Made by a program: the position numbers and the translations under genes. A DNA stretch of 64,000 nucleotides, from contig CM119373.1 of NCBI GenBank assembly GCA_051294905.1, forward strand, positions 29,388,001 to 29,452,000, given 5' to 3'. Positions 22,997 to 64,000 of this stretch are shown piece by piece; positions within the stretch are counted from its first letter, which is position 1, and every line of letters begins with the position of its first letter. A model generated the notes under the pieces. That model saw only the letters and a program-made list of their open reading frames with translations. It made no database searches and had not been told where the DNA came from. The DNA is from Botryllus schlosseri. Its lineage: Eukaryota.

Positions 22997-23144
22997 CGGA
23001 TGACCGTGCTTGATGTAGCCTGATCGAAGTTTGGTGTATTTTCCATTTTTTCAAGTGCCTTGCTTCATGTTATATATATTTTAGTTAATAGAGTACATTT
23101 AAAAAATTTTGTCAAAGCTAGTAGAACAGCACTTCAGGTCGACG

Positions 23145-25006: not shown

Positions 25007-25933
25007 GTGTTGAGTTTGGTCGAATCGGGTGCACTACTAAACACACGAGATTGTGTACTATTTCTGAGAAATCACGGGTTGTTGGTGCGAAGGATGAAAT
25101 GCAAGAGATGTAGAAAAATAATGAAAGAGGAAAATACGTCGACAGGCGACGATGGGTTTAGGTGGCGATGCAACCCCTGCGACACTACGGCGACTATACG
25201 AAAACACTCGATATTCGCAGGAAGCAAGGTAGAACTTCCCAAATTATTAATATTATTCTACTTTTGGGCCCATGACGCGTTGCAAACCCAAATTGCACAT
25301 GAAGCTGAAATTAGTCAGCGTTCAACGGTCACCTGGTGCGGCCGATTGCGAAAGCTTTGTACGGCCGAATTTCACAGGAATAAGCGACATCTGGGAAATG
25401 AAGGCGGCTGTGTGGTCATTGATGAAACGCACTTAGCTAAGCGCCGGGCTGCCTCAGACAAAGGACCAGCCGTTAAAGCCATTTGGGGGTTCGGTGGCAT
25501 AGATAAAGCTACCGGAGAAATGTTCATTGAGATTACTTCCGACAGGACTGCTGAAGTATTTCGAAAACTCATAGTAGAAAATGTGGCAGAGGGGTCCACA
25601 ATTTTAACCGATGCCTACCCTTCCTACAGGGGCATAGAGAGCTGGGGGAAGGGTTATATACACGGTGTAGTGGACCACTCCCAGTGGTTTAAGGACCCTC
25701 GGACATCTTTTTGTACTAATGAAATCGAGGGGGCCTGGGGCCAGCTTAAATATCATTTACATAGGTCTCGTGGGTTAGCACGTCACCTTTTGGCCGATTA
25801 TGTAGGGGAGTTTTTGTGGAAACGTCAATATCAAAAGACTGACCGATTTTTGGCACTCCTGCGTACCATACACAATGACCCACGGTATAATTTTGACAAA
25901 TTTGATGGGTCTCCTGTATTACCACAATTGTGA
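25007..25933 (+). CDS. IS1595/ISXO2-like (Merlin-type) DDE transposase 1; no in-frame ATG at the homologous N-terminus
   Basis: Zn-ribbon CKRC...WRCNPC, VVIDETHL, ILTDAYPSY, H.(V/I)VDHS, TNEIEGAWGQLK, Y..EF.W; frame is open from 24950. Confidence 0.88.
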   Translation: MLSLVESGALLNTRDCVLFLRNHGLLVRRMKCKRCRKIMKEENTSTGDDGFRWRCNPCDTTATIRKHSIFAGSKVELPKLLILFYFWAHDALQTQIAHEAEISQRSTVTWCGRLRKLCTAEFHRNKRHLGNEGGCVVIDETHLAKRRAASDKGPAVKAIWGFGGIDKATGEMFIEITSDRTAEVFRKLIVENVAEGSTILTDAYPSYRGIESWGKGYIHGVVDHSQWFKDPRTSFCTNEIEGAWGQLKYHLHRSRGLARHLLADYVGEFLWKRQYQKTDRFLALLRTIHNDPRYNFDKFDGSPVLPQL

Positions 25934-26062
25934 ACCCCGCTATAAGATTCCAGGACGGAAATGACGACATCTGTTATTTTGTGTTTTTACAGACGGTAGT
26001 CTAGGGCTAGTGCGCACTTATATTTAATTTATGACGTGGGGAAAACCACCACTGCCCGTACC

Positions 26063-28579: not shown

Positions 28580-28666
28580 TGCACGCATATGTACTCAAAG
28601 GATTTTACTTTTATAAAATTTAATTTTTTCATAAGTCCACAGATATACTAACTAATTTATAATAAT

Positions 28667-31600: not shown

Positions 31601-32068
31601 TCATCAGGGGACTATCAGAGCCAACCCACATCAGTAAGTAAAAATGATGTAATCAGAGGTTGGAAGAGTACTTCCAACAGTGCACTTTCTTCAATAACAC
31701 CCTCTATCGAAGAAGAAGGAAAAACTACACTCAGTATACCGCATACCTTACCTACGGCCAAATATGACAGACTGGACCGAATTACATTTGACTTTTATGG
31801 ACGACTGCACAAACTACAAGAAATGGAACAAGAATATGCAGCAGGTAAAATTATTGTTGATATTAACAATAGAAAAGATTTAGAAGAATCACTTAACAAT
31901 TATGTCTTGATTTTTGCGGTTAGCGTAACAACAATGGTAGGATGTATGTATTTATGTTATGCGAAATGCGGGAGAGTTGCAGCTAAAACTTATCTTAGAG
32001 AAGTTATTCGGCGGAATAACCGAAAGATGTATATTAACGTAGTAACATTGCATGAAAAACTGAGGTAG
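28667..32068 (+). CDS. Second type I membrane glycoprotein: Env-SU-like N-terminal domain plus Ser/Thr mucin-like stalk
   Basis: Signal peptide; RYWNNVRQYERECGCNRKL matches Env RYWKNVPEFERTCLCQRRL; long T/S-rich region; TM YVLIFAVSVTTMVGCMYLCYA. Confidence 0.82.
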   Translation: MNRYLKIWIVLAVALTLHRGYLQTHGQLLPLSDMSVVPRIAFNLTGWTTFRYQGLRYIRLNQLFKLNESWPIGETENNFPIYKETPEFGPTRASQDQLYKLFAPSGSDKRYWNNVRQYERECGCNRKLSRISPDITLAAFTRTTTYRRKNNFGSVHTWKYVVGRGAHGTMAVPGPILRMISPNATPQVSIHQLLTVYKLSVMNILAQYATVTARCQQRLGEIAGWRVNKGDFNVCVHGEDNQMQCIGCSFYTDDLAVNILSRDFVVMEIDNSIRGLGTRMQETYSYSQWPAGVRLPRLHHDIVWLKARNETGPRERPANFDGHTWFRLRIYALREHLNNDTQRIMGKKNFPTMLQGSIECERKKNKKVCRNSIGSLKTALAFKEVLYDPYTNQSVYADHSHGRLQIASPRTVGQESPLEAWPKNLPNCKQPGRLGNLILTASFKSNGQNTRNIDYYLARLGMFYVEVTKRRLRQLSLPIYKMRKTLGRLDRSITGEEMESLSQTLRSALTPQKLSRINEELLSYMSTRKLIEAQLYDMRIFRPSVAYKAIICAGILVYTPYAYKENIQPKTNSARPSSIAKALTTRPSSKEGTTRSVTPSSESSTVYNFTSFEMDPEPTVKMVETMITAGASIKRTDQYDINRYNYDNIEGYEGFSYDENDNYTSLQEPENYYYDYYDVDGEYDSSLRRKPISVSDTTTSTNIIETTNALSTSGTPTAITGSQYTIKSTMVTATSTPRPSAYTPKSTAATLTTTTITPYTRRFTSTIITSGTTSSTPLPAMSMTEYSSREDNTSPRPTASIITFLTTVKTVSEQERRRTRPTTILTTVEPSTAISTEMDTQKSIGIATTGVTFSERGLTTRVPMERSVNAKLQWNTMTDQIPTKNGEMIGSLSVPIKKTPQITQTPESYIQLSYHTNQLMDTKPQRVHFKMLFDTTQVATTVETHQCFVTGHSRSNTEPDNLNKEQDLQVRTKSTTMLSSGDYQSQPTSVSKNDVIRGWKSTSNSALSSITPSIEEEGKTTLSIPHTLPTAKYDRLDRITFDFYGRLHKLQEMEQEYAAGKIIVDINNRKDLEESLNNYVLIFAVSVTTMVGCMYLCYAKCGRVAAKTYLREVIRRNNRKMYINVVTLHEKLR

Positions 32069-40252: not shown

Positions 40253-40768
40253 ATGACAAGTGCTGATGCCATGGAGGCCTCTGTTCTGGATGAACAAATC
40301 TGGACCGGAAGGTGGATTGTTGTATTAAAAAATATAGATGAATTTCTCAAATCATGCCAAACATCGCCTGAAGCGGATGAAAATAAGGAAAATGAACAAG
40401 AAATTGACGAGGCCACCTTGGAAAGCTATTTTGAAAGAAACCCTTCGATTTGGGGAGATAGTACCGATTCGGAATTAGATCTAACCGACTCGGATGGAAG
40501 TTTGAGTATCTCGTCACATACTGATTCTGGACATGATGATATAGAGTCCTATTTTTACTCAGATAATGAGTCCGGGTCTTATTCTGATTCCGAGTCTAGT
40601 GATTTGACAGACTCGGACGAAAGTTTGAATACTCTACCCGATACTGACTCTGGGGTTAATAGTAGCGATTCCGATCTATCCTCAGATCATGAACAGTTAC
40701 GATCTCTTGACGAGGCAACTCTCAGGCGCCTTGATAGAATGTTTTGGCGCCCCTGGATGAACGAGTAA
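40253..40768 (+). CDS. Acidic Asp/Glu/Ser-rich protein with a near-terminal WRPW motif
   Basis: 171 aa, repeated DLTDSD/DTDSG units, ends RMFWRPWMNE. Confidence 0.65.
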   Translation: MTSADAMEASVLDEQIWTGRWIVVLKNIDEFLKSCQTSPEADENKENEQEIDEATLESYFERNPSIWGDSTDSELDLTDSDGSLSISSHTDSGHDDIESYFYSDNESGSYSDSESSDLTDSDESLNTLPDTDSGVNSSDSDLSSDHEQLRSLDEATLRRLDRMFWRPWMNE

Positions 40769-41567
40769 AATCGGAAAATTATGCGACCAAATGTACAAAT
40801 CCATAGGGACCATAATTTGTGGTGTGTGTATATTGACGATTTTGCATTATTACCAAAGATGTCGCGTTCTCTTATTATTTTGCAATGTTATTATGAAACA
40901 AGTTATACTGCGTGTATCTGGTTGTTGAAAGAGTTGAGCACCAAAATAACAACGTTAGTATATTCGACAGCTTTATGAAGTATAAGATAGATCGTTGGCT
41001 TGCATAAGATAGGAGATTAGTCATAGAGGCCTCAGACTCAAATGTGCACGCGGGACATTTCCTAGTTTAGGCAACACTGCGCGCCGTAGCACCAATAATC
41101 TGAGTATTTGATATGTGGGTTCTAGCTTGGTAGTACTTGATAGTTATTTACAGGCAGGCGCTCAACAAACAACGTTAAGTTGTAATTCACTATTACATTA
41201 TTCACGTTTAATTAAGATCATAACATTTTCGAAAAATTAGAATAAAAAAAAAAAAAAATTTTTTTTTTGGACCAAAGCATATCTTCTTTTAGTTAAAAGG
41301 TTATAAATTGTGGTGCCTGTGACACATTAGTTCTATCCTCAGGACTCTAATTGATTCTAACATCTGGTCCCGCTCAGCTGGTGTCGTTATTTTATGATCA
41401 TCTAATTAGTCTTAGAATAAGTAAGTTGATGTTGTAGCACCAAATTAATTTATAATTTTTAAGTCACGAATGATGGTAACAATATTAGACAATATCTTTG
41501 ACTAAAAGGAAATATTATTCTCTTTAGGTGTAAAAATAACAAGGACATAAATAAAATAAATAAAAGA

Positions 41568-42086
41568 ATGTCTGCCTCAATAACTAAAGAACAATTGTGG
41601 GAGTTATCTATTGAAAATATCGAACTATGGTACGAAGAACTTCGGGGGGTGAAAAAGACAGAGAGATTACAACGATGGAATGATTTTTTCGAGGACATTA
41701 AGAATGGAACTAGACATTATGCGGAGGCTTTCTTCGAAGGAATGGGAGCGAGTAATGAAAAGGTTAAAGAATGGCCGTGGCGAAATGACTATCGTAGAAA
41801 GCACTTAAAAAATCGAAGGGTAGCAAACATAAAACCATATTCACAAAGGAAATCGGCCTCAAACAAACAGAATAGAAATGAAGACATAGCGGCTAGCTCC
41901 TCAACATCGACAAGTAGTCCTCTTTTGACACCCATACTGACGTCGTCTTCAACAAGCCACGACTTGCCGCATACTGGCAATGTTATGACAGATGAGACGT
42001 ATGCATCTTTTGGCAGTATCATGTTTCGTCAACAACTGCCTATCGCTAGGTTTCAGCCTACAACATCACGTCATGCTGATGTTTAA
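41568..42086 (+). CDS. Hypothetical viral accessory protein (172 aa)
   Basis: ATG-started ORF on the element strand, preceded by a TCTTTAG acceptor-like site; no recognisable domain. Confidence 0.55.
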   Translation: MSASITKEQLWELSIENIELWYEELRGVKKTERLQRWNDFFEDIKNGTRHYAEAFFEGMGASNEKVKEWPWRNDYRRKHLKNRRVANIKPYSQRKSASNKQNRNEDIAASSSTSTSSPLLTPILTSSSTSHDLPHTGNVMTDETYASFGSIMFRQQLPIARFQPTTSRHADV

Positions 42087-42269
42087 TTCATTTCTCGCAT
42101 GTTATTTGACTAACATGATTGGTAGGGTTGTATTAATGAAGTTGAGCTAATGTATTTTATCTGCCTCGCATTGATGTACAATATGAACCAATATACTAAT
42201 GTTGCGTGAATAAAAAGGAAAACATTTTGTATTCTAGAAATATAAATAGTGAACTAATTAAAGAAGACA

Positions 42270-43130
42270 ATGTGTTACGGGTTATTATGTAATCCTGATA
42301 CGGACCATAAAGTTGTCCACGAATGGGCAATGCAGTTCACTCTGACGCATAGGCAGCAGATGGTAATGGAAGCCATAAAAACTGCGCCGGTTCGGGACCG
42401 ATTGATGAGCCTCTTGTTGGGTACTTGTGAAAGGGACAATCCAAGGGTACAATATTGGCAACAATGTATGTACACCAAAGAGGACTGGACAAAATTAAGA
42501 AAGCCTTTTCACCCGGTCGGGAACAGTGAATGCAAAAGCTGCTGGCTTACGACGAATGTTAAGCCATATTTCAAGAACACTTTGCAGGTTCTTGAACTTA
42601 TAAAAGTGTGCCATGTCTATTTATTAGAAGCCTGTAGTATGCACAAAGGACTAGATCAAAACACCGAAAAAGATAAAGGAAATATAGTGCTTTATGTATT
42701 ATATCCAGAAGCGATAATAACCGCCATAGCTCTCCTGTTGCAACAATATCGAGGGGCAAAAAACATGCGAACTTTTTGTTTTACGAGATGTCGAATGGAC
42801 GCAGAATTTGAGTTCCTATTTGGGGGGAACCCTGAACAATGGAAGTTTACATACGGGTCCACAACCACTTTTGGTTATGTGGGGGGCGTTTTTATTCTAC
42901 CGATTGACCAACTGTCGGAATCAGCTCTTGAAACCTCGTTAAAAAAAGAGGGAAACAAACAAATAGTCAAAAATACCAGTTCGGAAACTACATTGGTGTT
43001 TGACATTGAGCCTTCAACCAGTAGAGATGATAGGCTTACGAACAGACTAGAGGCTCCGACCCGAATGGTAGCTTTAGGGAGACCCAGTGCAGACGGAACC
43101 CATGGTGTTTCTAGTGTTAAAATGAGCTGA
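42270..43130 (+). CDS. Hypothetical viral accessory protein (286 aa)
   Basis: Long ATG-started ORF on the element strand with several Cys/His residues; no family recognised. Confidence 0.65.
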   Translation: MCYGLLCNPDTDHKVVHEWAMQFTLTHRQQMVMEAIKTAPVRDRLMSLLLGTCERDNPRVQYWQQCMYTKEDWTKLRKPFHPVGNSECKSCWLTTNVKPYFKNTLQVLELIKVCHVYLLEACSMHKGLDQNTEKDKGNIVLYVLYPEAIITAIALLLQQYRGAKNMRTFCFTRCRMDAEFEFLFGGNPEQWKFTYGSTTTFGYVGGVFILPIDQLSESALETSLKKEGNKQIVKNTSSETTLVFDIEPSTSRDDRLTNRLEAPTRMVALGRPSADGTHGVSSVKMS

Positions 43131-44605
43131 TTCTAAAATGAGCTACTAATAATTTGATCTAGAAATTGTCTTCAGAAATGCGGTAAAGACGTAATATGGA
43201 ATTGTAAGATAGGTTAATCTGGACTTTTAGGGCTAGCCTAAAAGATAAGCCATGATAACTGAATTATTTAGGACTGACTGGTAATGGTTTAGGACAAATT
43301 TACAAATTCGGCATCATTACCAAAAAGTCAAACTAAACGGAAAAAGTATAGAAGCCGGGTATAGCGAAGCCGGAGATTAGCAAAAGTGGAGACTATATCC
43401 CTGTATTTTACTATCTATATATATACTCAGATGATAATACAGTTTATATTTTTATTAAAAGATTCCGATACATTGATCAATCGCTGGGATAGTTCCCACT
43501 ATCACCTCCCCTAGAATAACAACCCGGGGACTATGAGAACTTGAGTACTTGAATGCAAGACCGACCTATCTTTATTGCAAAAACTTTTTTAAATTCGAGA
43601 AGAACTTGTTACTGTCAATTATGAAGAACTGTATGATGCTTGTTTCCTATAATATTGAATGTTATGTGCGTATTTTCGGCTGCAATTTTCGTGTTTAAAA
43701 TTGGTCTGTAACGGCCCCAGACTACCTACCCTATCACAAATCACCTCGTGTTCATACTTAAATGTTATGCTAATCGAATTATATTTTATAAAGGCTGACG
43801 TGAGCGTAATTTTTTCTGTTTTTGCCCGCAACTGTCGCTCTGCCAAAACCTCTTTGTATGAGCCCCACACCAAATTGACGCTATTTTGATTATTGCTGCT
43901 ATTACATTTTTCTGATTATGTAAATTCTTTATTGTACTATACATAAGATGCGTAAAGATTAGCTTAGCCCCTAGTCTTTTACCCAATACTCGATTATGTA
44001 AAATTTGTGTAAAGTAATATTTTGCAAATTGCTCACATTCCTGTCCTCATGGCACCCTTCCTAAAATAGTCTCTATGAGACGTGTTTGTGTAATACTTGT
44101 ATAAATGATCCTTGAATAAATTAGTTTCGCCATTCAGAGAAACTCGGGTCGAAACATTTCTTATGGAAGGGAAGGAAGGAATGATGAGTAATATTACCTT
44201 TTAAATTGATATGTTGTATTACTTTCCCCACTAAAAAAAATCTTCAAAAATATGAAATATCTAAATTTGTTTATAGATTATAAAAATTAATAAAAACGAC
44301 AGTCAAAACCAAAAGAGAAAAAGTCATATTCTAAGAAAATCTTCAAAGAAAAAAATTATATAAATTAAAACCAAAAGAAAAAATTTTCAAAACAATAAAA
44401 TCCCTTGTGGGGGGGAGAGATTTATTGCCCAATAAGTACTGGGTGATTAATAAATGAATAAATGTCTTTATGAGTATGGAGGATACTTTATATAAGTTCG
44501 GAATAAAAATTAAAGGCATTGTATGAATCTTGAAAATTACTATACCGAGAAAATGGAAAATTGTACATATTTTTAAGGTATTAATAAAAAATAAAAATAA
44601 AAGGA

Positions 44606-45175
44606 ATGTTGGAATTTGATTATATTGAAGGTCAAAACGACCTACCAAATTGGTTTCTTTTGTATGATGTATATGATGAATTGGATCTACTGAATCTGAA
44701 AGAATATGATAGCGAGGAGGAGAGATTCCAGTTAAAAGAAAGAGTGTGGGAATTGCTTACGGACCGAGAGGATTGGGTTAAACAAACAGACAATGGCCTA
44801 GAAGAGGCAGCCCTAGATGAGGAAATAACCTCAGAAATTTTTGATGTGTTCAATCATGTGGTAGAAGAGATATTTGAAATAAGAGCGAAAGAATACACCT
44901 CTTTTGGAAGAAGAGTCATGTTGTATGAATTGATTAGAGGACTTGTGATGAAACTTACAAACACTAATATAACAAAGAATGTGTACCAGGAGAGAGAATA
45001 TTGTAAAGATCCGCCACATATGGAACAATGGAATTGTCAAAATAATTTGGGAATAAAAGGTTATTCAAGTTCAATACATTGGCGAACAAAAAGGATAAGG
45101 CGTATAGAAATACATCCTTACCCCTATGAAGGGGAAAGTGTGAACATTGACTCTATAATACCGGAACAATCATGA
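44606..45175 (+). CDS. Hypothetical protein, orphan family B member 1
   Basis: RRVMLYELIRGLVM...WNCQNNLGIKGY matches the 48246 ORF. Confidence 0.7.
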   Translation: MLEFDYIEGQNDLPNWFLLYDVYDELDLLNLKEYDSEEERFQLKERVWELLTDREDWVKQTDNGLEEAALDEEITSEIFDVFNHVVEEIFEIRAKEYTSFGRRVMLYELIRGLVMKLTNTNITKNVYQEREYCKDPPHMEQWNCQNNLGIKGYSSSIHWRTKRIRRIEIHPYPYEGESVNIDSIIPEQS

Positions 45176-45270
45176 ATAATGACAACGAATGTAAATAAGA
45201 TTTTGACTTACAAAGGACACTTTTTCGAAGGTATAGAGGAACAGAGTGGGTTATCTAATTTAGGAGTAAA

Positions 45271-46311
45271 ATGAACCGAGTGGAACTACTAGTATTATGG
45301 CTGGGCATGTGTTATGCTATTTATCCGGAAACAATAGAACAAAAGAAATGTACAATTAATGAAAGACGAACCATGTTATACCCGGAATGCATGCAAGGAA
45401 GCAATTTGGTACTTTGGTGTGACCATTCGAGTTATACAAGGATTCCGGATCCTGACAAAATATACCTGGCAAAATCTTGTCGGAACACAGTAAAGATATT
45501 CATCAACGACAGCTGCCTACGGGAAATAACCAAAGGACAATTGGAAAAGTATAAAGAAGTAGAGGTGTTGCATTGTGGTTGGAATAAAATCCAAACAATA
45601 CCAGGAGGAGTCTTCTGCAAAAATGAAAAGCTCAAGGAGGTAAACTTGATGCGCAACTACATCACACGAATTGAAAAAGAAAGCTTTTCAGGCTTATACC
45701 AACTGGAAAGTCTGTACTTAAGCAGTAATTTGTTGGCAGAGGTGGAAGGATCGATATTTGCCAGTCTGGAGAATCTGCAAAAGCTATATCTGGACAATAA
45801 TGAGATAAAAAGATTGAGGAATGGAACATTTGTTCACTTGCGCCGTCTCAGGATACTGGATTTATCAAGAAATGCAATAAACGCTATAGAAAAAGGGGCG
45901 TTCCAAGGACTGAGGAAACTGGAAACGTTACACTTGGATGAAAATAGACTGGTTGAGTTTGATATGACAGTACTCGAATCTTTATGTAATTTAGAGAGAT
46001 TAACGTTGTACTATAATGAATTACAATATTTTTCCCTGTCCTCCAATATCTCGTTCAAATATCTACATACTATTGATCTTAGTTATAATCACGTTCAATT
46101 TCTTAGTGATTCTCTATTGAAAAAATTACCAGACTTGGAGGTGTTAAAATTAAATAGACATAATAATGGAACGCCTACCAAAAGACCCCATGTGCGTAAA
46201 CAATCGAGATTATATTATAATGAGATGAAAAATTTATCCCATTGTGTGACTATACTTTCGAAAGGTATATTTACCGTTATTGTATGGCTAGTCACTATTG
46301 AACTGATGTAA
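45271..46311 (+). CDS. Secreted or membrane-anchored leucine-rich repeat protein
   Basis: Signal peptide, Cys-containing N-cap, about 9 extracellular-type LxxLxLxxNxI/L repeats, hydrophobic C-terminus. Confidence 0.88.
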   Translation: MNRVELLVLWLGMCYAIYPETIEQKKCTINERRTMLYPECMQGSNLVLWCDHSSYTRIPDPDKIYLAKSCRNTVKIFINDSCLREITKGQLEKYKEVEVLHCGWNKIQTIPGGVFCKNEKLKEVNLMRNYITRIEKESFSGLYQLESLYLSSNLLAEVEGSIFASLENLQKLYLDNNEIKRLRNGTFVHLRRLRILDLSRNAINAIEKGAFQGLRKLETLHLDENRLVEFDMTVLESLCNLERLTLYYNELQYFSLSSNISFKYLHTIDLSYNHVQFLSDSLLKKLPDLEVLKLNRHNNGTPTKRPHVRKQSRLYYNEMKNLSHCVTILSKGIFTVIVWLVTIELM

Positions 46312-46375
46312 ATCTAAAGAAAATATAGAATCTTGAGGTATTGATTCAGTATCGTCCTGTTCAACTAATAATAAG

Positions 46376-46930
46376 ATGTTTAATATATTAGAATACGGTA
46401 AAAATATTACTAAAAGTATCAAAATGTGTTTGGGATTGCGTTGTGATGATCCGGAGATACAACATTTGACCTGGATACCCCAAAAGGAAACACTAATAGA
46501 CAACGGATTAAAGTCGCTGAAGTTTCTGTTGACAACATATTCACTGACGGATCACTTATGTGATATAATGTACGACGAATTAAATCCACGACTACTATAT
46601 TGGAAACAAAAGTATGGTGTCACAACATGCAACAATCATTGGCTGGGGAAACATCTGGTTGAAAATGAGTGGGAAGAAATTTATACAGGAAGCATTTACC
46701 CTGAAAAACCTATACAAATGGCTTTTGCAGAAATTTGCATAAACTGGGTAACAATTTTAAAAAGAGTAAATCCTGAAATAAGGGAATTTCTAAAAAAGGG
46801 AGATTCTGAAAGAGATCTCATAATGTGGATAATCTTTCCGGAAGTTCAAATTTATGCATTGGCAAAGACGCAGGAAATATCATTAAAGGAAGCCGATTGT
46901 AGATTTATGACTTTGAAAGTACCTGCATGA
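46376..46930 (+). CDS. Hypothetical viral accessory protein (184 aa)
   Basis: ATG-started ORF tightly packed between the LRR and DDE2 genes. Confidence 0.6.
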   Translation: MFNILEYGKNITKSIKMCLGLRCDDPEIQHLTWIPQKETLIDNGLKSLKFLLTTYSLTDHLCDIMYDELNPRLLYWKQKYGVTTCNNHWLGKHLVENEWEEIYTGSIYPEKPIQMAFAEICINWVTILKRVNPEIREFLKKGDSERDLIMWIIFPEVQIYALAKTQEISLKEADCRFMTLKVPA

Positions 46931-46998
46931 AACTTAACTTTCCGATGTTTATGTATACAGAAACTACTTTTGAAAAGACAATTAAGTTTTAAATAAAT

Positions 46999-47946
46999 AT
47001 GAAGACTAAAGAACCCAGAAAAAGAAGAAATCTATTCAATCTTGCTCGATGTGGTATAATATCAAGTGAACGAAAATGTATAAAGTTTTTGCGATCACGG
47101 AAACTTCTTGTTCAAAAGGAAACATGTTTTAAATGTGGACAACAAATGAATGAAGAAAAATGCAAAAGAACTATGGATGGATATAGATGGAGGTGTCTGG
47201 GTTCAAAGTGCCGGACTACCACGTCCATAAGGAAAAGATCGCTATTTGAAGGAAGCAAAATAAGACTCACCCAACTTGTAATGATGATTTATCTTTGGAC
47301 CATAGATGTATCTCAACGACAAATAGCTTTTGAAGCACACGTTAGCAAGAGAACAATGGTGAATTGGACCAAGAAACTTCGTAAGATATGCTCTGGGGAG
47401 ATGGAAAGAAGAGATACTCTAATAGGGGGAATATCACAAGGTAAATCACATGTAATTCAAATTGATGAGACGTTTGTGGCCAAAAGAAAATTTAATCGTG
47501 GAAGAATAATACGCCAACGCTGGGTTTTGGCTGGAATAGATATGAAAACGCGAGAAATGTTTGCAGAATTGGTACCTGAAGAAGGGAGAAGAACCTCTGT
47601 ATTATCAGAAATAATTATGAAACACGTAAAAGAGGGATCCACTATATGGACTGATTCATTTGCCAGTTACCGCAAGTTGGAAAGCCTGGGAATGAATTAT
47701 AAACATTCAATAGTTAATCATGATCGCGAATTTGTCACCCCAGAAGGCATAAATACACAATTGATCGAGGTGTCTTGGAATTTTTTCAAAGCTGCTATTA
47801 GAAGACTGAATGGGGTATCAAGATCACATATTCCCCATTACTTACAGGAGTGGCTCTGGAAGAGAAGAGTGGCCTTGGAAGAAAGATTTCAACGATTTCT
47901 GGATATAATTGTCCTTGATCCCAACTTTCGGACATTAGAACATTGA
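46999..47946 (+). CDS. IS1595/ISXO2-like (Merlin-type) DDE transposase 2
   Basis: CFKC...WRCLGSKC, IQIDETFV, KRKFNRGR, IWTDSFASY, HSIVNH, TQLIEVSWNFFK, YLQEWLW; no flanking TIRs. Confidence 0.9.
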   Translation: MKTKEPRKRRNLFNLARCGIISSERKCIKFLRSRKLLVQKETCFKCGQQMNEEKCKRTMDGYRWRCLGSKCRTTTSIRKRSLFEGSKIRLTQLVMMIYLWTIDVSQRQIAFEAHVSKRTMVNWTKKLRKICSGEMERRDTLIGGISQGKSHVIQIDETFVAKRKFNRGRIIRQRWVLAGIDMKTREMFAELVPEEGRRTSVLSEIIMKHVKEGSTIWTDSFASYRKLESLGMNYKHSIVNHDREFVTPEGINTQLIEVSWNFFKAAIRRLNGVSRSHIPHYLQEWLWKRRVALEERFQRFLDIIVLDPNFRTLEH

Positions 47947-48245
47947 AACAATGTTTGTCACTATGAGTAATATCATCCGACATGAGAGGTTGAATCTTCA
48001 GGGAAGCAATAGAGGCATGTATTATAATATACATGCTTAGAAAATCTATGAAATGTTTCTATTAAAGTACATATATGAGTCGAAATAATAATATAATTGC
48101 ATTATATTGTTGTTGTATCATAGTGAGGGAATGTATTATATATATGTCATGTGATGTATCAAATACCAGAATTAAATGCATTGAAGTCTTGAATTGAAAT
48201 CCTTTTATTGATATTGCATATTATTGTTATATTGACAGGGAAAAA

Positions 48246-48896
48246 ATGTATCTATCTGAAGTACAGGAGTATAATACTGCTATTTTTTGTAAATTGATGA
48301 GTCAATTAGATAAAGTGGATGTACAAAAAAATACTGGCTGTCTAAAATTGCTGATGGAGATGGTAAAAAATTTTTTTGAACAAGAACATAATTGGTACAA
48401 GAGACAACTTCCATGCGGTAACGAAATATCCAATGGTTGGATGTCGGAGGACGAAACGTCTAGTAATACGGACTCTGACGACTCCCAAGATTCTGCCATT
48501 GTGAAAGATTCATCACGACGACGACGACTTATAGTATGGAATAAACAGACAATACGACCCGATGAAAATACATGGACTATAATTACGGAAACCTTGATGG
48601 GAGTTGTCCGAAGAATACCTCCCCTATGTATGAGGCGAGTAATATATGAAGTAATACGAGGAGTAGTAATGGGCTATACAAGGTTGTTGATATGTTCAAA
48701 TAGCCTTGCTTATGTTACAGACGCAAATTGCAAGTGGATTTGGCACAGCCAAACCAATTTAGGAGTAAAAGGATATATGTTGTTGGATTCTGACACATCT
48801 GTTATGGATGCATATATATATATATACTCGAAGAAAGTAGATAAGAAAGCCCAGTCAATGAATCAATATCTGGAAAATTCCTATATTTTCGATTAA
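48246..48896 (+). CDS. Hypothetical protein, orphan family B member 2
   Basis: MRRVIYEVIRGVVM...WHSQTNLGVKGY matches the 44606 ORF. Confidence 0.7.
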   Translation: MYLSEVQEYNTAIFCKLMSQLDKVDVQKNTGCLKLLMEMVKNFFEQEHNWYKRQLPCGNEISNGWMSEDETSSNTDSDDSQDSAIVKDSSRRRRLIVWNKQTIRPDENTWTIITETLMGVVRRIPPLCMRRVIYEVIRGVVMGYTRLLICSNSLAYVTDANCKWIWHSQTNLGVKGYMLLDSDTSVMDAYIYIYSKKVDKKAQSMNQYLENSYIFD

Positions 48897-49145
48897 CATC
48901 TCCATCAATTGTTGTTGCATGTTGACGATTAAATAATGATTTCACACCTAATCCATGGAATTTATCGAACCAATGCTAATTTTGAACCTTGAGAAATTTC
49001 ATGTAATGATTTTTTTTAACAGAATGTTTGTGTATTATTACTAGAATGTTGGATTGGTATGGTTATATTTAGACATTTTGATCTGTAATATTGAACGCCT
49101 GTTCTATCAAAAGCAATTACACCGAGAAACGACCGAATTGAAACT

Positions 49146-58681: not shown

Positions 58682-61600
58682 AGACAAATTGATATTTCAA
58701 CACATAAAAACTTTACATAACTCTTCTTTACCTTTATTTACATTTCTTGATATGCCGGATGACCCTCTACAGCCCGATTTTACGGAATTGTTTGGTAGCC
58801 AATTGTTGTATTTGGTTGATACAGCAACTGGTACAAAATTCCTAGCTGACACGGGGAGCATCCCCAATTTAATAATGAAAAACGTAATTATAACTAAATA
58901 CCCACAAAGCTGGGAGGAACGTCAACCAATAGATATGGAATTGACTGGAATAGGCGGCTCGTCCCAAGTGGACTCCTTTGTAGTGATTGATTTTGATGGG
59001 CTGTCTGTTCCATTTGTGACCGGATCAGGAGTCCCACTTAATATCATAGGGCTGAAATGGATTGAGGAAGTCCAACAATTACCAGGCATCACTGCTGAAT
59101 TCAAAACCCCGTCTAACGCAAATGTGGAGTTGTCTTTAGTATCACTACTTGAAGAGAATCTTTGTGATCAGAGTAACGGAACCAAAGTCGGAAGCAGTAT
59201 TAGCTACACTGTAACCGACGATGGGTTGATGGATGCTGCAAATCAAAGTAGCGTGAAGCGGAAAATTGCCGCTGGCGCGAGTACCGAGATGGAAATGACC
59301 ACCGGTGCGAGTGACGAGTTGAAGTTAGCAACTAGCGTCACACATAACCCATGGGAATCTATAGGTGTTGAGACAGGAATTCCTGCTGACACCGTAAATG
59401 AAGACGTCGAGCGTGGAATCCCCGCTGGCGTAAAGTTGGACCTGCACGAGAAAACTGGTCCTAAATGCTTGCGTGGATGCACTTGTCCGAATAACCTTAA
59501 TGATTCGGCCCATAGCTGCATGACGACAGCCACAGTAATGAGTACTTTCCCAGAAGGTTCAAATGAAGCAGCAATTGCCGGTCAACCGGATACACATCCG
59601 GAGATGTCCGACAAGGAGTCTGGGGATTTTAGGATGCACGTCTCCCCAGAAAAAGGGTCCCCGGCGGAAAATGAGTCCGTCGGCGTGGCGGTAGGTGCGG
59701 GCACGCGCCGAGACCAGAGGCCTACATCGAAGGACCTCGCTCTCTCTCCACCAACACCAACAATCCGGTCATCACGAATCTCAAACCAGCCTATGGCTGG
59801 ACCAGTCACTACGTATGTTTTACAGAAAGACACTCACCCACGAGTCAAGACGGAGCTCGAAAATCTTTGCGCACAATCGGTAGCGTTGGCCAAACTCCCA
59901 TACAAACCTCCTGATCTGACGTCTCCAGAAAATACCATTATCTCTGATGATGTCTGGAAAGCCATCTACGCACCATTTGCGTCCGAGCTCGAGGACCTGC
60001 GGAGCCACCTTGGCGGCCCGCAAACCATGAAGTACAAATGCGACATCGAGCTTAAAGATCCTTCGACGAAACCATTTGTGTCTGGGCCTTATAATCTGAA
60101 GGGGGAGGGCCAGGCGAAAGCATTGAAAGAAGCAGTAGACAACTTCCTGGACTTGGGCGTTATCGAAAGAGGTTTTGCCGAATGGAAGTTGGCTATCTTT
60201 GTGGTCCCCCAGAAAATGAATGAGAGACAAAAACAGGAGGACGGATGGAAGCAAGCATGGAGAGTAGTACAGAATCTCCAACCCCTTAATGCGGCCATAA
60301 AATCGATAGAAGTACCTCCACCTCTTGTACCGGACGTAAAGCAGCTCGCCCAAGGCAGAGAAGTGCTTTCTCTCCTTGATTTGAAGAAGGCCTATTTCCA
60401 CATGGATGTAACGGAAAGATCTAAACAATATATGGGTATAGCCATCAAAGGGATGCATGTAAGATGGCGTAAAATGCCGATGGGGCTTAAAACCGCTGTG
60501 GCTCTTTGGAGCGCGAATATGCAGGAATGCGTGGTGAAACCTATCACGGAAAAATACCAACAACACATGAAACAGGTTGGCAGAGCAGACGAGGAAAATG
60601 CGACGCCTATGGAGGCCTACATAGACGATATTTTCCTCAGCACAAAAACTGTAGAAGACCACTTATTGCTGCTACGCATGGTATTTGAACAGCTTGCCAA
60701 AATGAAACTAACAGTTAGCATCAATAAATGTTTCATTGGAAAACGGAGGGTGAACCTTTTGGGGGCAACCTTGACGGGGAAGGAAATTGAGGTTCAGCCC
60801 GAAAGAATAAGGGCTTTACGCGAACTCTCACCACCCCATAATGTGTACGAGTTAAGGGGGTGGATTGGCGCGCTTCGCTATATCTCGGAGCATATACCTG
60901 AGTTAAGTTTGAAGCTGGCTAAATTCGATGCGCTAACAGGCAAGGTCCCTGCGACACAAGGACGAATGACGCCTGTGTTATGGACCGATGAATTACTGCA
61001 GGATTTCAAAATGGCACAAGCAGCCCTTGATGATACTAAGGTCTTGTACCATCTAGATCCAAATCTTCCCATTTTTGTGGAAACAGACGCCTCAGATGTT
61101 GGGTTTGGGTCAATCATTTTCCAGACGGAAAAAGGATGTAAACCGCCTTTCGAAAAGGTCTACCCAATTGCTTATTACAGCCAGAAATGGGTAACTCCAG
61201 CGGCAAAAGCCTATGATCCGTGCACAAAGGAATTGAAAGCCTTAAAGGATTCGGTCGAAAAATGGCAGTCAATGTTGAGAGCCTTACCCTTTACAATAAT
61301 TACTGACAATACTGGGGTATTTGGACTTCTCAAAAGAATGACGGACAAGGCAAAACACCCAAGCCCAAAACCCCTTATTCAGAGGTGGCTCAATCATCTC
61401 GCAGGATTCCAAATAAACGAGGTAATTCATTTAAGCACGATGCAAGTATTCACGTCAGATGGATTGTCTCGATCATATTGGATGGAAATGGCAGCGGGAG
61501 AAGAAGATCCACATGTTTGGGCGACGATTCCCAAGAAAAAAAGCGTTCAAGACCAGCAGAAAATGCCTCGACCGGAGAAAATACAGCACAAATTGATGGC

Positions 61601-62072
61601 CCATTGTCGACATGAGCCTTGTGACAAATCGGTGGATGGGTACCATCCCTGGGAAGATATTTGTGAAATCATTAAAATAAAGACCGGGGTGGAAATGAAA
61701 ATGGAAGAATTAAAAGACGTCATGAAAAGGTGCGACAGGGCAATTGTCTCAGAAAATGGATTGGCGGCTGCCCACGGGCATACACAAGGGAAGCCTCCTC
61801 AATATTGTAAATATGAAGGTAACGAGGTATTGTACCACATGACGACTGAAAACAATGCAAGACAGATAATGTCTAAAGGCATTGAACGAATGAAAAGGAG
61901 ATTCATTCATTTGAGCAAAACGATAACGAAGAAAAGCAAAAAACGTAATGTGGTAATTTGCATGAAAGCAGCAGAGATAAGAAATGAAGGGCTATTACTG
62001 CTGCAATCAAACGTGAAAAATGTGGTATTGTGTGAAGGCCCTATACCACCAACAGTCATACAAAAATTGTAA
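58653..62072 (+). CDS. pol: Pol polyprotein: aspartic protease, reverse transcriptase, RNase H and a Tpt1/KptA-like domain; no integrase
   Basis: FLADTGS (58848), LDLKKAYFH, MPMGLK, YIDD (60618-60629), TDASD (61083), ELKAL, TDN, DGLSR; then CRH...GHT...LYHMT...GIERMKRRFIHLS...IPP. Expressed by frameshift; the start shown is the ORF-track GTG. Confidence 0.93.
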   Translation: MLIDPVNQLPDKLIFQHIKTLHNSSLPLFTFLDMPDDPLQPDFTELFGSQLLYLVDTATGTKFLADTGSIPNLIMKNVIITKYPQSWEERQPIDMELTGIGGSSQVDSFVVIDFDGLSVPFVTGSGVPLNIIGLKWIEEVQQLPGITAEFKTPSNANVELSLVSLLEENLCDQSNGTKVGSSISYTVTDDGLMDAANQSSVKRKIAAGASTEMEMTTGASDELKLATSVTHNPWESIGVETGIPADTVNEDVERGIPAGVKLDLHEKTGPKCLRGCTCPNNLNDSAHSCMTTATVMSTFPEGSNEAAIAGQPDTHPEMSDKESGDFRMHVSPEKGSPAENESVGVAVGAGTRRDQRPTSKDLALSPPTPTIRSSRISNQPMAGPVTTYVLQKDTHPRVKTELENLCAQSVALAKLPYKPPDLTSPENTIISDDVWKAIYAPFASELEDLRSHLGGPQTMKYKCDIELKDPSTKPFVSGPYNLKGEGQAKALKEAVDNFLDLGVIERGFAEWKLAIFVVPQKMNERQKQEDGWKQAWRVVQNLQPLNAAIKSIEVPPPLVPDVKQLAQGREVLSLLDLKKAYFHMDVTERSKQYMGIAIKGMHVRWRKMPMGLKTAVALWSANMQECVVKPITEKYQQHMKQVGRADEENATPMEAYIDDIFLSTKTVEDHLLLLRMVFEQLAKMKLTVSINKCFIGKRRVNLLGATLTGKEIEVQPERIRALRELSPPHNVYELRGWIGALRYISEHIPELSLKLAKFDALTGKVPATQGRMTPVLWTDELLQDFKMAQAALDDTKVLYHLDPNLPIFVETDASDVGFGSIIFQTEKGCKPPFEKVYPIAYYSQKWVTPAAKAYDPCTKELKALKDSVEKWQSMLRALPFTIITDNTGVFGLLKRMTDKAKHPSPKPLIQRWLNHLAGFQINEVIHLSTMQVFTSDGLSRSYWMEMAAGEEDPHVWATIPKKKSVQDQQKMPRPEKIQHKLMAHCRHEPCDKSVDGYHPWEDICEIIKIKTGVEMKMEELKDVMKRCDRAIVSENGLAAAHGHTQGKPPQYCKYEGNEVLYHMTTENNARQIMSKGIERMKRRFIHLSKTITKKSKKRNVVICMKAAEIRNEGLLLLQSNVKNVVLCEGPIPPTVIQKL
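61575..62069 (+). other. RNA 2'-phosphotransferase (Tpt1/KptA, PTS_2-RNA)-like domain at the Pol C-terminus
   Basis: Tpt1 motifs in the expected order and spacing: RH (61608-61613), DGY, DRA, AHGHT, LYHMT (61830-61844), MKRRFIHLS (61890-61916), S-N...VVL...IPP. Confidence 0.8.
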
Positions 62073-62880
62073 ATACATATTGGCAGAGTGTAACTAAGTA
62101 TTATAAGACGGGTAAACGGACAAAAAAAAACCTATAATGGGAGTAAACGGAAAAAACCGAAACCTCGTAACTAGAAAAAATGCTGAGTCAGCACATTTTA
62201 AGCTCGTGTGGAAAAACGAGAGAAAAAGAAAAAAAAAGAAATAGGGGTTTAAGTGATAAAAGAAGGTAATTGAATTAAATGATCATGGGGAATCATGATG
62301 AATGACGTCAAGTATACACACGAGTAAAGCGGGCATATACTGCATTAGTTCCCAATGTTTTGTTGTTCGACCAATCTAGTCCCCAGTAAATTCCATGATA
62401 GTGTTCAGCGTTCGTGACCACATTTTCTTGAAGCGAATGCACACTTGTACCTGAAAGCATGAGGAATATGGATCGTCATTCATAAACATATGTCAATTAT
62501 GTGGTAGATGAAGGCGCCAATGGCTGCGACTATGTATGGGAGGTGACAGGGTGACTTCTAGGGGAGAAAATTCAGATACCTTTGACCTTAGTCGTAATTT
62601 TGTAGTAAAACTATGTTTAAAATTCATTCAATCCGAGCACCCATCCAACCATACGCCCCCAGTCTACAATACCGCAAACCATTTCAGCGCAATCGCTGCA
62701 AAGACGTAACTCGCTAAGTACATGATGTCTACAGATCACTATGTGATCATACTGAGAACCAGGACTACATGCCAGTACTGTATGGAGATATATACCAGCA
62801 AGGTGGTAGTGGATTATCTTCATGTGTACCACCTTCTTGTGCCTTCATGGAGTGGTACGCGAAAACAGTAAAGACCACAG

Positions 62881-63758
62881 CAGTGGTTCTCAACCAGGGG
62901 TCCGCGGACCCCTGGGGGTCCGTGAAGCATTTTCAGAAGGTCCGCGAAGCCTCAAAATATTTGATAACCTAATTTGTATTTTTTTTAATTCGGAAAATCA
63001 CAAGGCAGTTTCGCTTCATTACTAGTAAAACTTCCGAACTCACATACACAGAATGGCCGTCTGAGATGAAATATTCTACAGTACAGACTCATTTTAATTG
63101 CTAAATTGCCATTAGCCCACTGATTCAAACATTTTGCTGTTTAGAGATGTTTTGTTGGGGATTGTTGGAAAGAAAAGTTGGATGAGTAAGGTCAATCACG
63201 GCGACTTCGAAATATTTACAAAAATTCACTTTCTCCTGTGATACATAACCATTTTTTCATAATAACTTCAAGATAAGCTGCTAGATAAAAATGACCAGGC
63301 TTGACGTTATTTGATCATTAAAAAATTGTTTGTCAATTTTGGTGCCATATATTTGTTGCGATCATATACCCAAATGTGTCGTTGGAAGCGTTCCGCGTTA
63401 TAATTACATTCGCCACTATCTATATTTGTGGAAATGTATTTTTGGCACTCGTTCATGTAAAATCGAAGGCGCGGATTTTCAAGACACGACCACCTATTTC
63501 AAGAAATTGCAGAAGTCGCTTAGAAATAATAGAAGTCAACCCAGTTTCTACATGAATAGTATGATCTCATTTTCAAGAAAAGTGATTTTGGTGATGTTTA
63601 TCACTAAGGGTATACACTATACAGTTATCATTTTGCACAAGACAGATGACGATTGCACGATAATTGAGCTAAATTTGGACTAAAACTTCGTGGGGGGTCC
63701 GCGGAGTCCATGACGGTCCGAAAGGGGTCCGCGAACACAAAAAGGTTGAGAACCACTG
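62881..63758. mobile_element. hAT-type non-autonomous element with GGGGTCCGCG motifs
   Basis: TIR CAGTGGTTCTCAACC / GGTTGAGAACCACTG; TSD GACCACAG / CACTACAG (6/8). Confidence 0.85.
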
Positions 63759-64000
63759 CACTACAGCATATGGTATATCCCCATAATAATTAATGTACTA
63801 GACCTGCCTACCGGATCAAGCCAGACAACACAATTATGTGGGAAGTACCTCGATAGCTAGGAAGGAGAATTTCCAATGCGAAAGGCTATGATCGTTATAG
63901 CGTAGAATCGATCCCGTCGAGGAGGGTATATATTAGGATAGCGTATTTATCGATTTGCATCCTGATAAGGACGCCAGTGGAGGAACATTTTTTACTCTGT

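What the first reader, a model, noticed from the sequence alone, without database searches (positions are those of the whole stretch)
61575..62069. Pol ends in a Tpt1/KptA-like ADP-ribosyltransferase-fold domain where integrase should be
Seen: after RNase H (DGLSR) there is no HHCC or D-D35-E integrase. The last ~165 aa read LMAHCRH..SVDGY..EELKDVMKRCDRA..AAHGHT..LYHMT..IMSKGIERMKRRFIHLS..GLLLLQSNVKNVVL..PIPP, matching the Tpt1 pattern LRH..DGW..RF..QGHS..LYHGT..GL..M.R..HLS..G..S.N.V.L..IPP. Candidates for the Arg-His-Arg-Arg catalytic tetrad appear to be retained. Established: Tpt1 transfers RNA 2'-phosphate to NAD+, and some homologues ADP-ribose-cap 5'-phosphorylated DNA or RNA ends. Inference: a virion-packaged Pol domain could cap or protect cDNA ends or gaps, or repair tRNA primer or genomic RNA damaged by host nucleases. 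I know of no characterised retroviral Pol with this fusion.
Basis: partly seen in the sequence, partly recalled or inferred. Interest (0 to 1): 0.95.

Follow-up and report, generated by a model that had tools for sequence, protein, structure and literature searches.

The report
Retroelement polymerase carrying a Tpt1 phosphotransferase
An uninterrupted gag-pol mobile element in a sea-squirt-like genome carries a well-preserved Tpt1 enzyme (NAD+-dependent removal or tagging of phosphates on RNA and DNA) where the DNA-inserting integrase normally sits; a small, apparently undescribed family of elements shares this layout.

Summary
ORF2 (58653-62072, 1139 aa) reads protease-like, reverse transcriptase, RNase H, then a Tpt1/KptA domain at aa 976-1129. 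That domain passes Pfam's cut-off (PF01885, 45 bits against 26). Its AlphaFold model (pLDDT 92) matches solved Tpt1/KptA structures only (TM about 0.8). The Arg-His-Arg-Arg tetrad (R986, H987, R1029, R1082) and the NAD+ contacts are present.

There is no integrase in any frame of the window. There are no terminal repeats and no env-like ORF, so "retroviral" is not supported. The element is about 7 kb. It has a gag-like ORF1 with a CCHC knuckle and a -1 frameshift signal (A AAA AAC plus hairpin).

It belongs to a distinct family: at least 14 database clusters have Tpt1 in the same place and keep the tetrad at only about 28% domain identity. One sub-lineage adds a full ExoIII/APE1 domain after Tpt1. 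The reverse transcriptase is nearest to caulimovirus and Ty3 enzymes. Neighbouring genes point to a tunicate-like host. I found no paper describing this fusion.

The substrate is inferred, not shown. I slightly favour 5'-phosphate ADP-ribosylation of replication intermediates over classical 2'-phosphate removal. I did not fetch the DNA of relatives.

The parts
55230..62300 (+). Approximate extent of the retroelement (about 7 kb); both ends are uncertain by tens to about 100 nt
   Evidence: GC rises from 0.30-0.35 to 0.43-0.56 at about 55300 and falls again at about 61900-62250. An 81-nt motif that also occurs at 53636-53716 ends at 55229, so it belongs to the flank. No ORF of note lies after 62072. 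No direct or inverted terminal repeats were found. The shared 10-mer at 55163/62296 is not significant, with 188 of 500 shuffles matching it.
55483..55500 (+). Candidate primer-binding site (starts TGG), 310 nt upstream of ORF1; untested
   Evidence: Read directly. No tRNA gene lies in the window to compare it with.
55810..58659 (+). ORF1, 949 aa, uninterrupted, gag-like by position
   Evidence: The only family signal is a CCHC knuckle. There is no PDB sequence match.
58159..58203 (+). CCHC zinc knuckle (ORF1 aa 784-798)
   Evidence: PF00098, E 5e-4, 20.5 bits against a cut-off of 20.8, so just below threshold.
58638..58644 (+). Heptamer A AAA AAC in the ORF1 zero frame: a candidate -1 programmed frameshift site for gag-pol expression
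   Evidence: The ORF2 frame is open from 58614 and is the -1 frame relative to ORF1.
58649..58682 (+). Hairpin 4 nt downstream of the heptamer
   Evidence: MFE -18.1 kcal/mol, z -2.43, and 1 of 200 shuffles folds as well.
58653..62072 (+). ORF2 (pol), 1139 aa, uninterrupted: protease-like, linker, RT, RNase H, Tpt1
58833..59075 (+). Retropepsin-like protease (ORF2 aa 61-141)
   Evidence: RVP PF00077, E 0.013, below threshold. The D-T-G-S, G-x-G-G and I-G positions are invariant in 7 family sequences. The AlphaFold model has pLDDT 74, and all its best PDB matches are retroviral proteases, at E about 4e-4 and TM about 0.5.
60249..60773 (+). Reverse transcriptase (aa 533-707)
   Evidence: RVT_1, E 8.9e-18. 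PDB best hits are 8r0s 3.1e-19 and Ty3 4ol8 9.8e-14.
60981..61409 (+). RNase H (aa 777-919)
   Evidence: RT_RNaseH_2 E 8.8e-19 and RT_RNaseH E 6.9e-17.
61578..62039 (+). Tpt1/KptA domain (aa 976-1129). Tetrad codons: R986 at 61608-61610, H987 at 61611-61613, R1029 at 61737-61739, R1082 at 61896-61898
62200..62260 (+). A-rich polypurine tract (80% purine) after pol: either a plus-strand primer tract or an A-rich 3' tail; undecided

Best explanation
SHOWN: this is an uninterrupted copy (no stops or frameshifts in either ORF) of an undescribed lineage of integrase-less gag-pol retroelements without terminal repeats. Its Pol reads protease-like, RT, RNase H, Tpt1, and is probably made by -1 frameshifting from a gag-like ORF1. 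The Tpt1 domain has the full two-lobe fold, the Arg-His-Arg-Arg tetrad and the NAD+ contacts. These are kept across relatives that share only about 28% identity in this domain. INFERRED: the domain is therefore an active NAD+-dependent phosphotransferase under selection, working within the Pol polyprotein on the element's own nucleic acids. FAVOURED MECHANISM, inferred at about 0.35-0.4: it acts on 5'-phosphate ends, which the neighbouring RNase H creates on RNA fragments and exposes on cDNA after primer removal. It tags them with ADP-ribose from NAD+, or strips the phosphate, and so controls whether those ends can be ligated or degraded. In this reading it replaces integrase as the end-handling enzyme. 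The sub-lineage that adds an ExoIII/APE1 domain would then have a 3'-end and nick enzyme for the same job. My confidence is about 0.9 for identity and anatomy, about 0.75 for catalytic competence, and 0.4 for the whole statement including the substrate.
For: Domain identity: PF01885 at 45 bits against a cut-off of 26; NF002013 E 7.9e-16; PDB phmmer hits are Tpt1 only; AlphaFold pLDDT 92 and pTM 0.81; the top 22 Foldseek hits are all Tpt1/KptA, best E 3.7e-12 and TM 0.81. Catalytic residues: R986/H987/R1029/R1082 align to RslTpt1 R16/H17/R64/R119 (PMC8464070). The tetrad, H1062, T1064, H1086 and the G-H linker are kept in 14 of 15 family sequences. Of 11 columns invariant in the family, 10 are also conserved in canonical Tpt1. 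Family: P0001-P0006 match at E 1e-105 to 1e-163 in RT-RNase H, against 1e-25 for the next-best proteins. The closest Tpt1-domain hits are Pol fragments that carry the RNase H end. Several 997-aa copies lie on different contigs of 0.6-1.5 Mb. No integrase or repeated ends. Frameshift signal. For 5'-phosphate ends: several Tpt1 enzymes, including the closest solved sequence relative (P. horikoshii, 8tfi), cap 5'-phosphates of RNA and DNA (PMC12678800). The same tetrad serves that reaction. The family lacks the Lys two residues before the third Arg (0 of 15, against 10 of 13 canonical), and in TkoTpt1 its Ala mutant stalls at the 5'-phospho-ADP-ribosyl-DNA stage. P0161 carries a complete ExoIII/APE1-type domain straight after Tpt1 (PF03372, positions 1-225 of 225; PDB E 3.3e-41). 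[quoted passage not shown]
Against: No substrate evidence exists for this protein. Tetrad conservation does not discriminate between 2'- and 5'-phosphate chemistry. The equivalent Lys-to-Ala mutants of the Runella, yeast and mammalian enzymes remain functional, so loss of the Lys is a weak pointer. The biological use of 5'-ADP-ribose caps is unknown in any system. The element's ends are not defined, and the primer-binding and polypurine candidates are untested. ORF1's gag identity rests on position, a marginal knuckle and the frameshift signal. The window holds one copy, and I did not inspect the DNA of relatives. The ExoIII/APE1 domain occurs in only one sub-lineage. The domain scores far below canonical Tpt1 (21-45 bits against 120-160 on PF01885) and far below the NCBIfam equivalog cut-offs.
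Confidence: 0.4

Rival explanations
1. Classical Tpt1 role. The domain removes internal or terminal 2'-phosphates from the RNA that the RT copies or uses as primer, for example after ligation or repair of cleaved RNA by a 2'-phosphate-leaving ligase. This would let reverse transcription and RNase H proceed.
For: Removal of RNA 2'-phosphate is the activity found in every Tpt1 orthologue tested, including those from taxa with no known 2'-phosphorylated RNA (PMC12621583). R986 and R1029 correspond to the arginines that drive step 2 of that reaction, and they are invariant in the family. Both lobes, including the RNA lobe, are modelled with confidence. The fusion next to RT-RNase H puts the domain on the RNA template.
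Against: No source of 2'-phosphorylated RNA is known in animals, and the host presumably has its own TRPT1. No ribozyme, tRNA-like or other processing RNA family was found in or around the element. Two residues conserved in canonical enzymes are absent from all 15 family members: the Lys two residues before the third Arg, and the Arg four residues before the G-H linker.
Confidence: 0.3
2. The element is an endogenous copy of an episomal, caulimovirus-style pararetrovirus of an animal. Such a virus needs no integrase or LTRs. In this reading Tpt1, and ExoIII/APE1 in one lineage, are packaged genome-repair enzymes that finish the gapped DNA. This concerns the type of element and is compatible with either substrate above.
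For: The best solved relative of the RT-RNase H core is 8r0s 'Enzymatic polyprotein' (E 3.1e-19, against 1e-13 for Ty3 and foamy virus). It matches the cauliflower mosaic virus RT paper listed (PMC11363490). There is no integrase and there are no repeated ends. The layout is a CCHC-bearing structural ORF followed by protease-RT-RNase H, with a TGG-initiated site upstream and a polypurine tract downstream.
Against: The copy is colinear and unpermuted, with both ORFs intact. A -1 frameshift between gag and pol is a retrotransposon or retrovirus habit. Many near-identical full-length copies sit on different large contigs, which looks like transposition. There is no evidence of an episome. The E-value gap to Ty3 is modest.
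Confidence: 0.2
3. The domain is used against the host rather than on the element's own nucleic acids. It might modify host RNA, DNA or protein with ADP-ribose, or consume NAD+, to blunt a defence.
For: The domain has an ADP-ribosyltransferase fold with an intact NAD+ site. ADP-ribosylation is a common weapon in genetic conflicts (general knowledge).
Against: The phosphate-binding tetrad of the nucleic-acid lobe is fully kept. Protein-directed transferases do not need it. No such role is known for any Tpt1.
Confidence: 0.07
4. The Tpt1 part is a passenger: a captured host exon or a chance read-through with no function in the element.
For: None positive; this is the default sceptical reading of a single locus.
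Against: The same position and the same catalytic residues occur in at least 14 clusters that share only 20-54% identity in the domain. The domain is closer to compact prokaryote-type Tpt1 than to human or mouse TRPT1. It lies in one uninterrupted 1139-codon ORF.
Confidence: 0.03
5. The C-terminal region is a degenerate integrase.
For: Only its position after RNase H.
Against: No integrase family was found at E <= 0.1. There were no integrase hits from 11 integrase-bearing Pols. All fold and sequence matches are to Tpt1.
Confidence: 0.01

Closest known systems
Tpt1/KptA/TRPT1 RNA 2'-phosphotransferases (solved examples: P. horikoshii 8tfi, T. kodakarensis 9ldc, Runella 7kw8, C. thermocellum 6e3a)
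   Same: Two-lobe fold (TM 0.74-0.81), the Arg-His-Arg-Arg tetrad, the H-x-T and H-L-S NAD+ contacts, the G-H linker, and a size of about 170 aa.
   Different: It is embedded at the C-terminus of a retroelement Pol rather than free-standing. It shares only 21-31% identity with canonical members. It scores 21-45 bits on PF01885 against 120-160 for canonical proteins. It lacks two otherwise conserved basic residues. It falls far below the NCBIfam equivalog cut-offs.
Ty3/gypsy (Metaviridae) gag-pol elements
   Same: A gag-like ORF with a CCHC knuckle, a retropepsin-like protease, RVT_1 plus RT_RNaseH_2, and pol in the -1 frame. The nearest non-family proteins in the 5.8-billion-sequence search are Ty3/gypsy Pols.
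   Different: No integrase, no LTRs, and at most 27% identity in RT-RNase H. Tpt1 sits where integrase would be.
Caulimoviridae Pol (solved RT 8r0s)
   Same: It is the best solved sequence relative of the RT-RNase H core (E 3.1e-19). The order is protease, RT, RNase H with no integrase, and the structural protein carries a zinc knuckle.
   Different: The host context is animal (tunicate-like). There is no movement protein. Gag-pol expression is by frameshift. The copy is chromosomal and colinear. There is an extra Tpt1 domain.
Retroviridae / endogenous retroviruses
   Same: The gag, protease, RT, RNase H order; a slippery heptamer with a hairpin; protease-model matches to retroviral proteases.
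   Different: No LTR, integrase or env.
Non-LTR (LINE-like) elements with an APE-type endonuclease
   Same: One sub-lineage (P0161) carries an endonuclease/exonuclease/phosphatase domain, and the window copy has an A-rich 3' region.
   Different: The domain is C-terminal rather than N-terminal. It is a close ExoIII/APE1 repair-type relative (E 3e-41). The RT is of the Ty3/caulimovirus type, and protease and RNase H are present. The window copy has no such domain.
DIRS/Ngaro tyrosine-recombinase retroelements
   Same: Integrase-less elements with a Ty3-like RT-RNase H.
   Different: No tyrosine recombinase domain or characteristic terminal repeats were found. A protease is present.

Membership tests
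Tpt1/KptA (PF01885) | Profile match above the curated Pfam threshold over the whole domain | tested here: met
   45.0 bits against a cut-off of 26, profile positions 5-177 of 177.
Tpt1/KptA (PF01885) | Two-lobe fold (winged-helix RNA lobe plus ADP-ribosyltransferase-type NAD+ lobe) | tested here: met
   AlphaFold pLDDT 92. Foldseek TM 0.74-0.81 to 20 or more Tpt1/KptA entries and to nothing else below E 0.08.
Tpt1/KptA (PF01885) | [quoted passage not shown] | tested here: met
   R986, H987, R1029 and R1082 align with RslTpt1 R16/H17/R64/R119.
Tpt1/KptA (PF01885) | NAD+ contacts (His and Thr of the H-G-T motif; His of the H-L-S strand) | tested here: met
   H1062, T1064 and H1086 are conserved in all family and canonical sequences aligned.
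Tpt1/KptA (PF01885) | Orthologue-level similarity (NCBIfam equivalog cut-off) | tested here: not met
   58 bits against a cut-off of 231 for NF002013. It is a divergent homologue, not an equivalog.
Tpt1/KptA (PF01885) | NAD+-dependent phosphotransfer activity | not testable with these tools
   No biochemical data.
Retroviridae / ERV | Long terminal repeats | tested here: not met
   No similarity between 52000-55810 and 62070-64000; no repeat families. The window ends 1.9 kb after pol.
Retroviridae / ERV | Integrase (HHCC plus DDE) | tested here: not met
Retroviridae / ERV | env gene | tested here: not met
   No ORF longer than 117 aa in 62073-64000.
Ty3/gypsy (Metaviridae) | RT-RNase H of Ty3 type together with integrase and LTRs | tested here: not met
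   The RT-RNase H type is met; integrase and LTRs are absent.
Caulimoviridae-like pararetrovirus | Protease-RT-RNase H without integrase, and RT similarity | tested here: met
Caulimoviridae-like pararetrovirus | Episomal circular DNA genome; permuted or tandem endogenous copies; movement protein | tested here: inconclusive
   No movement protein was found, and the single copy is colinear. Episomes cannot be assessed from one window.
Non-LTR retrotransposon | LINE-type RT with N-terminal APE or a restriction-like endonuclease | tested here: not met
   The RT is RVT_1 of Ty3/caulimovirus type, and no endonuclease lies in the window.
DIRS-like | Tyrosine recombinase and inverted or split terminal repeats | tested here: not met

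The most novel reading that the evidence does not exclude
Tpt1 has functionally replaced integrase. NAD+-driven ADP-ribosylation of a 5'-phosphate would be the element's way of entering the chromosome. It could act on the cDNA end, turning it into an activated end for joining. Or it could act on the 5' side of a chromosomal nick, blocking resealing so that the 3'-OH can be used. In one lineage the ExoIII/APE1 domain would supply the nick. That would be an insertion chemistry not known for any mobile element, and the first natural substrate context for Tpt1 in animals.
Probability: 0.07. Interest if true: 0.97.

Novelty: new variant of a known kind. Interest (0 to 1): 0.8.

Why it matters
Integrase is the defining end-handling enzyme of Ty3-like and retroviral Pols. 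Here a whole lineage has none and instead keeps an enzyme otherwise known from tRNA splicing. What Tpt1 does in animals, bacteria and archaea that lack 2'-phosphate splice junctions is a long-standing open question. A retroelement that has kept the catalytic site through deep divergence points to a concrete class of substrates: reverse-transcription intermediates. These can be looked for. The family also widens the known range of accessory enzymes in Pol proteins. Together with the ExoIII/APE1-bearing sub-lineage, it suggests retroelements that carry nucleic-acid end-repair modules instead of an integrase.

Tried and rejected
- Degenerate integrase: rejected.
- LTRs, inverted repeats or target-site duplication: none found. 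The only shared 10-mer is a chance-level match.
- A second copy in the window: the 847-aa and 1133-aa ORF pair at 26-32 kb is unrelated. tblastn with six family Pols finds only this locus.
- An APE-like domain in the window: none.
- Ribozymes, tRNA-like or other RNA families that could explain a 2'-phosphate junction: none at gathering score over 64 kb, and none relevant at E <= 5 over 54-64 kb. No tRNA genes.
- A word-indexed search for long proteins through the Tpt1 part alone found nothing. The family surfaced only through the RT-RNase H part and the exhaustive search.
- ORF1: no PDB or capsid-family match.
- Exact look-ups: ORF2 and the neighbouring IAP gene are not in the collections, so the source organism is inferred only from IAP homologues.
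- Names for the nearest free-standing Tpt1 proteins: almost none, with one Korarchaeota cluster.
- Literature: five full-text searches found no RT-Tpt1 fusion. This covers only the held library.
- A paralogue-based attempt to pin down the insertion point failed.


Full report
OBSERVATION. The window has no N. Two long + strand ORFs lie at its 3' end: ORF1 at 55810-58659 (949 aa) and ORF2 at 58653-62072 (1139 aa). Pfam finds RVT_1 at aa 533-707, the RNase H models at aa 777-919, and PF01885 (Tpt1/KptA) at aa 976-1129. The PF01885 match has E 1.6e-11 and 45 bits against a cut-off of 26, and it spans the whole profile. No integrase family appears. Eleven integrase-bearing Ty3/gypsy-type Pols match the window only across RT-RNase H, in any frame.

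IS IT REALLY Tpt1? Four independent lines say yes.
- Sequence against solved structures: ten Tpt1 chains, the best being P. horikoshii 8tfi (1.2e-8) and Runella 7kw8 (3.7e-8).
- NCBIfam RNA 2'-phosphotransferase models give E 7.9e-16, although the score is far below the equivalog cut-offs (58 against 231 bits). It is therefore a divergent homologue, not an orthologue.
- An AlphaFold model built on 38 sequences has pLDDT 92 and pTM 0.81. Its 22 best PDB matches are all Tpt1/KptA (best E 3.7e-12, TM 0.81). The human and mouse enzymes rank lower.
- Catalytic residues: the RslTpt1 tetrad R16/H17/R64/R119 (PMC8464070) aligns with R986, H987, R1029 and R1082. The NAD+ contacts H1062, T1064 and H1086 and the G-H linker are present.

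ANATOMY OF THE ELEMENT.
- Expression signal. ORF2 is in the -1 frame relative to ORF1 and is open from 58614. The heptamer A AAA AAC lies in the ORF1 zero frame at 58638-58644. A hairpin follows 4 nt later (-18.1 kcal/mol, z -2.43). This is the usual gag-pol expression signal, not a break. Both ORFs are uninterrupted.
- ORF1. It has only a marginal CCHC knuckle and no solved relative. I call it gag-like because of its position, the knuckle and the frameshift signal.
- Protease. The ORF2 N-terminus has a retropepsin signature that is invariant in seven family sequences, a sub-threshold RVP match, and a moderate-confidence model whose best matches are all retroviral proteases.
- Position of Tpt1. 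Tpt1 starts about 45 residues after the conserved end of RNase H, where Ty3-type Pols begin their integrase.
- Ends. There are no direct or inverted terminal repeats, no ORF of note after pol, and no significant target-site duplication. GC content and a flank motif put the element at roughly 55230-62300.
- Untested features. A TGG-initiated candidate primer-binding site lies at 55483-55500, and an 80%-purine tract at 62200-62260.

FAMILY.
- Searching with RT-RNase H finds six Pols at E 1e-105 to 1e-163 (41-52% identity). All end in the same Tpt1-like domain. The next-best proteins, integrase-bearing Ty3/gypsy Pols, are at E 1e-25.
- The exhaustive search with the Tpt1 part gives 54 proteins. 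The closest are Pol fragments that still carry the RNase H end, and ordinary free-standing Tpt1 proteins of about 180 aa follow at E 1e-8 or weaker.
- Within the family the domain is only 20-54% identical (median 28%). The tetrad is nonetheless kept in all but one of the sequences that cover it (P0114 has Gln for the first Arg), and the NAD+ contacts in all 15. That indicates selection for catalysis.
- Two basic residues conserved in canonical enzymes are absent from all 15.
- One cluster has 31 members, with several 997-aa copies on different contigs of 0.6-1.5 Mb.
- One sub-lineage (P0161) adds a complete ExoIII/APE1-type domain directly after Tpt1 in the same ORF (PF03372, positions 1-225 of 225; PDB E 3.3e-41). 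The window has no such sequence.

CONTEXT. The neighbouring IAP gene is most similar to ascidian IAPs (Styela 44-45%, then Ciona, Phallusia and Clavelina). The host is therefore most likely a tunicate or a close relative. The element is GC-richer than its flanks, as expected for an insertion.

WHAT KIND OF RETROELEMENT. Among solved structures the RT-RNase H core is nearest to 8r0s 'Enzymatic polyprotein' (3.1e-19), then Ty3 (1e-13) and foamy virus (4e-13). 8r0s matches the cauliflower mosaic virus RT paper listed. The element fails the defining tests for Retroviridae, Metaviridae, DIRS and LINE-like elements. It shares the integrase-less protease-RT-RNase H layout of pararetroviruses, but it is a colinear chromosomal copy with a frameshifted gag-pol. 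I treat it as a new integrase-less lineage of the Ty3/caulimovirus RT group. An endogenous pararetrovirus-like origin remains a live rival (0.2).

HOW IT MAY WORK.
- Shown: a catalytically equipped Tpt1 is fused next to RNase H and conserved across the family.
- Inferred: it acts on phosphates of the element's own replication intermediates.
- Known chemistry. Tpt1 enzymes remove RNA 2'-phosphates. Several of them, including the closest solved relative, also ADP-ribosylate 5'-phosphates of RNA and DNA. TkoTpt1 even removes DNA 5'-phosphates with the same tetrad (PMC12678800).
- Why I favour 5'-end chemistry (about 0.35-0.4). RNase H makes such ends next door. The domain sits in the place of a DNA-end enzyme. 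One lineage adds a DNA 3'-end and nick enzyme. The family lacks the Lys whose loss stalls TkoTpt1 at the capped intermediate. Animals have no known internal 2'-phosphate RNA.
- The rival (about 0.3). The classical 2'-phosphate role is almost as likely, because it is the universal activity of the family, and because the Lys is dispensable in the Runella (in vitro and in yeast), yeast and mammalian enzymes.
- I found no ribozyme or tRNA-like feature that would create a 2'-phosphate junction.

NOVELTY. Five full-text searches found no report of a Tpt1 domain in a retroelement Pol. Absence from that library is not proof. I rate it a new variant of a known kind: a gag-pol retroelement with a new accessory enzyme and without integrase.

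STEPS LEFT OUT AND A SLIP.
- I did not fetch the DNA of the relatives' loci by look-up or by related-locus scans. The host appears to be an animal and the element is virus-like, so I could not tell whether the bar on fetching a virus of animals applies. As a result, the ends, neighbouring genes and host species of the relatives are unknown.
- Slip. While judging the candidate primer-binding site I recalled 3'-end sequences of cellular tRNAs from memory, in my reasoning only. I draw no conclusion from them, so the site is reported as untested.

Noticed in passing
window 40253-54214 (+): More than 15 back-to-back single-exon ORFs, all on the + strand, with gaps of 5-150 nt, low GC (0.34-0.38) and positive skews. 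They include an LRR protein (45271-46311), an IS1595/ISXO2-like DDE transposase (46999-47946), an IAP with three BIR domains and a RING (49146-50840), and an E2 ubiquitin-conjugating enzyme (52537-52992). No viral hallmark gene was seen. This could be an operon-like tunicate cluster or the cargo of a large mobile or viral element; it is unresolved.
   Followed up: partly
window 50967-51446, 51452-51847, 53129-53587, 53729-54214 (+): A tandem family of small paralogous ORFs (22-31% identity) with no Pfam match.
   Followed up: partly
window 53636-53716 and 55149-55229: An 81-nt motif repeated at 75% identity. The first copy precedes one of the small paralogous ORFs. The second lies immediately 5' of the retroelement, which suggests the element inserted just downstream of such an intergenic motif.
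   Followed up: partly
window 25007-32068 (+): A second IS1595-like DDE ORF with a FYVE-like finger (25007-25933), followed by two large ORFs of 847 aa and 1133 aa. Neither has a Pfam or PDB sequence match, and neither is related to the retroelement's ORFs.
   Followed up: partly
window 4326-5183 (-): A Harbinger/PIF-type DDE_Tnp_4 transposase ORF (E 3e-31).
   Followed up: no
window 10661-11464 and 23109-24056 (+): ORFs with CD20/MS4A-like membrane domains: the first at E 2e-9, the second weak.
   Followed up: no
protein P0161 (relative, not in the window): In one sub-lineage the Pol continues after Tpt1 into a complete ExoIII/APE1-type repair nuclease domain. This domain is much closer to cellular repair enzymes (E 3e-41) than a LINE-type endonuclease would be expected to be.
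   Followed up: yes
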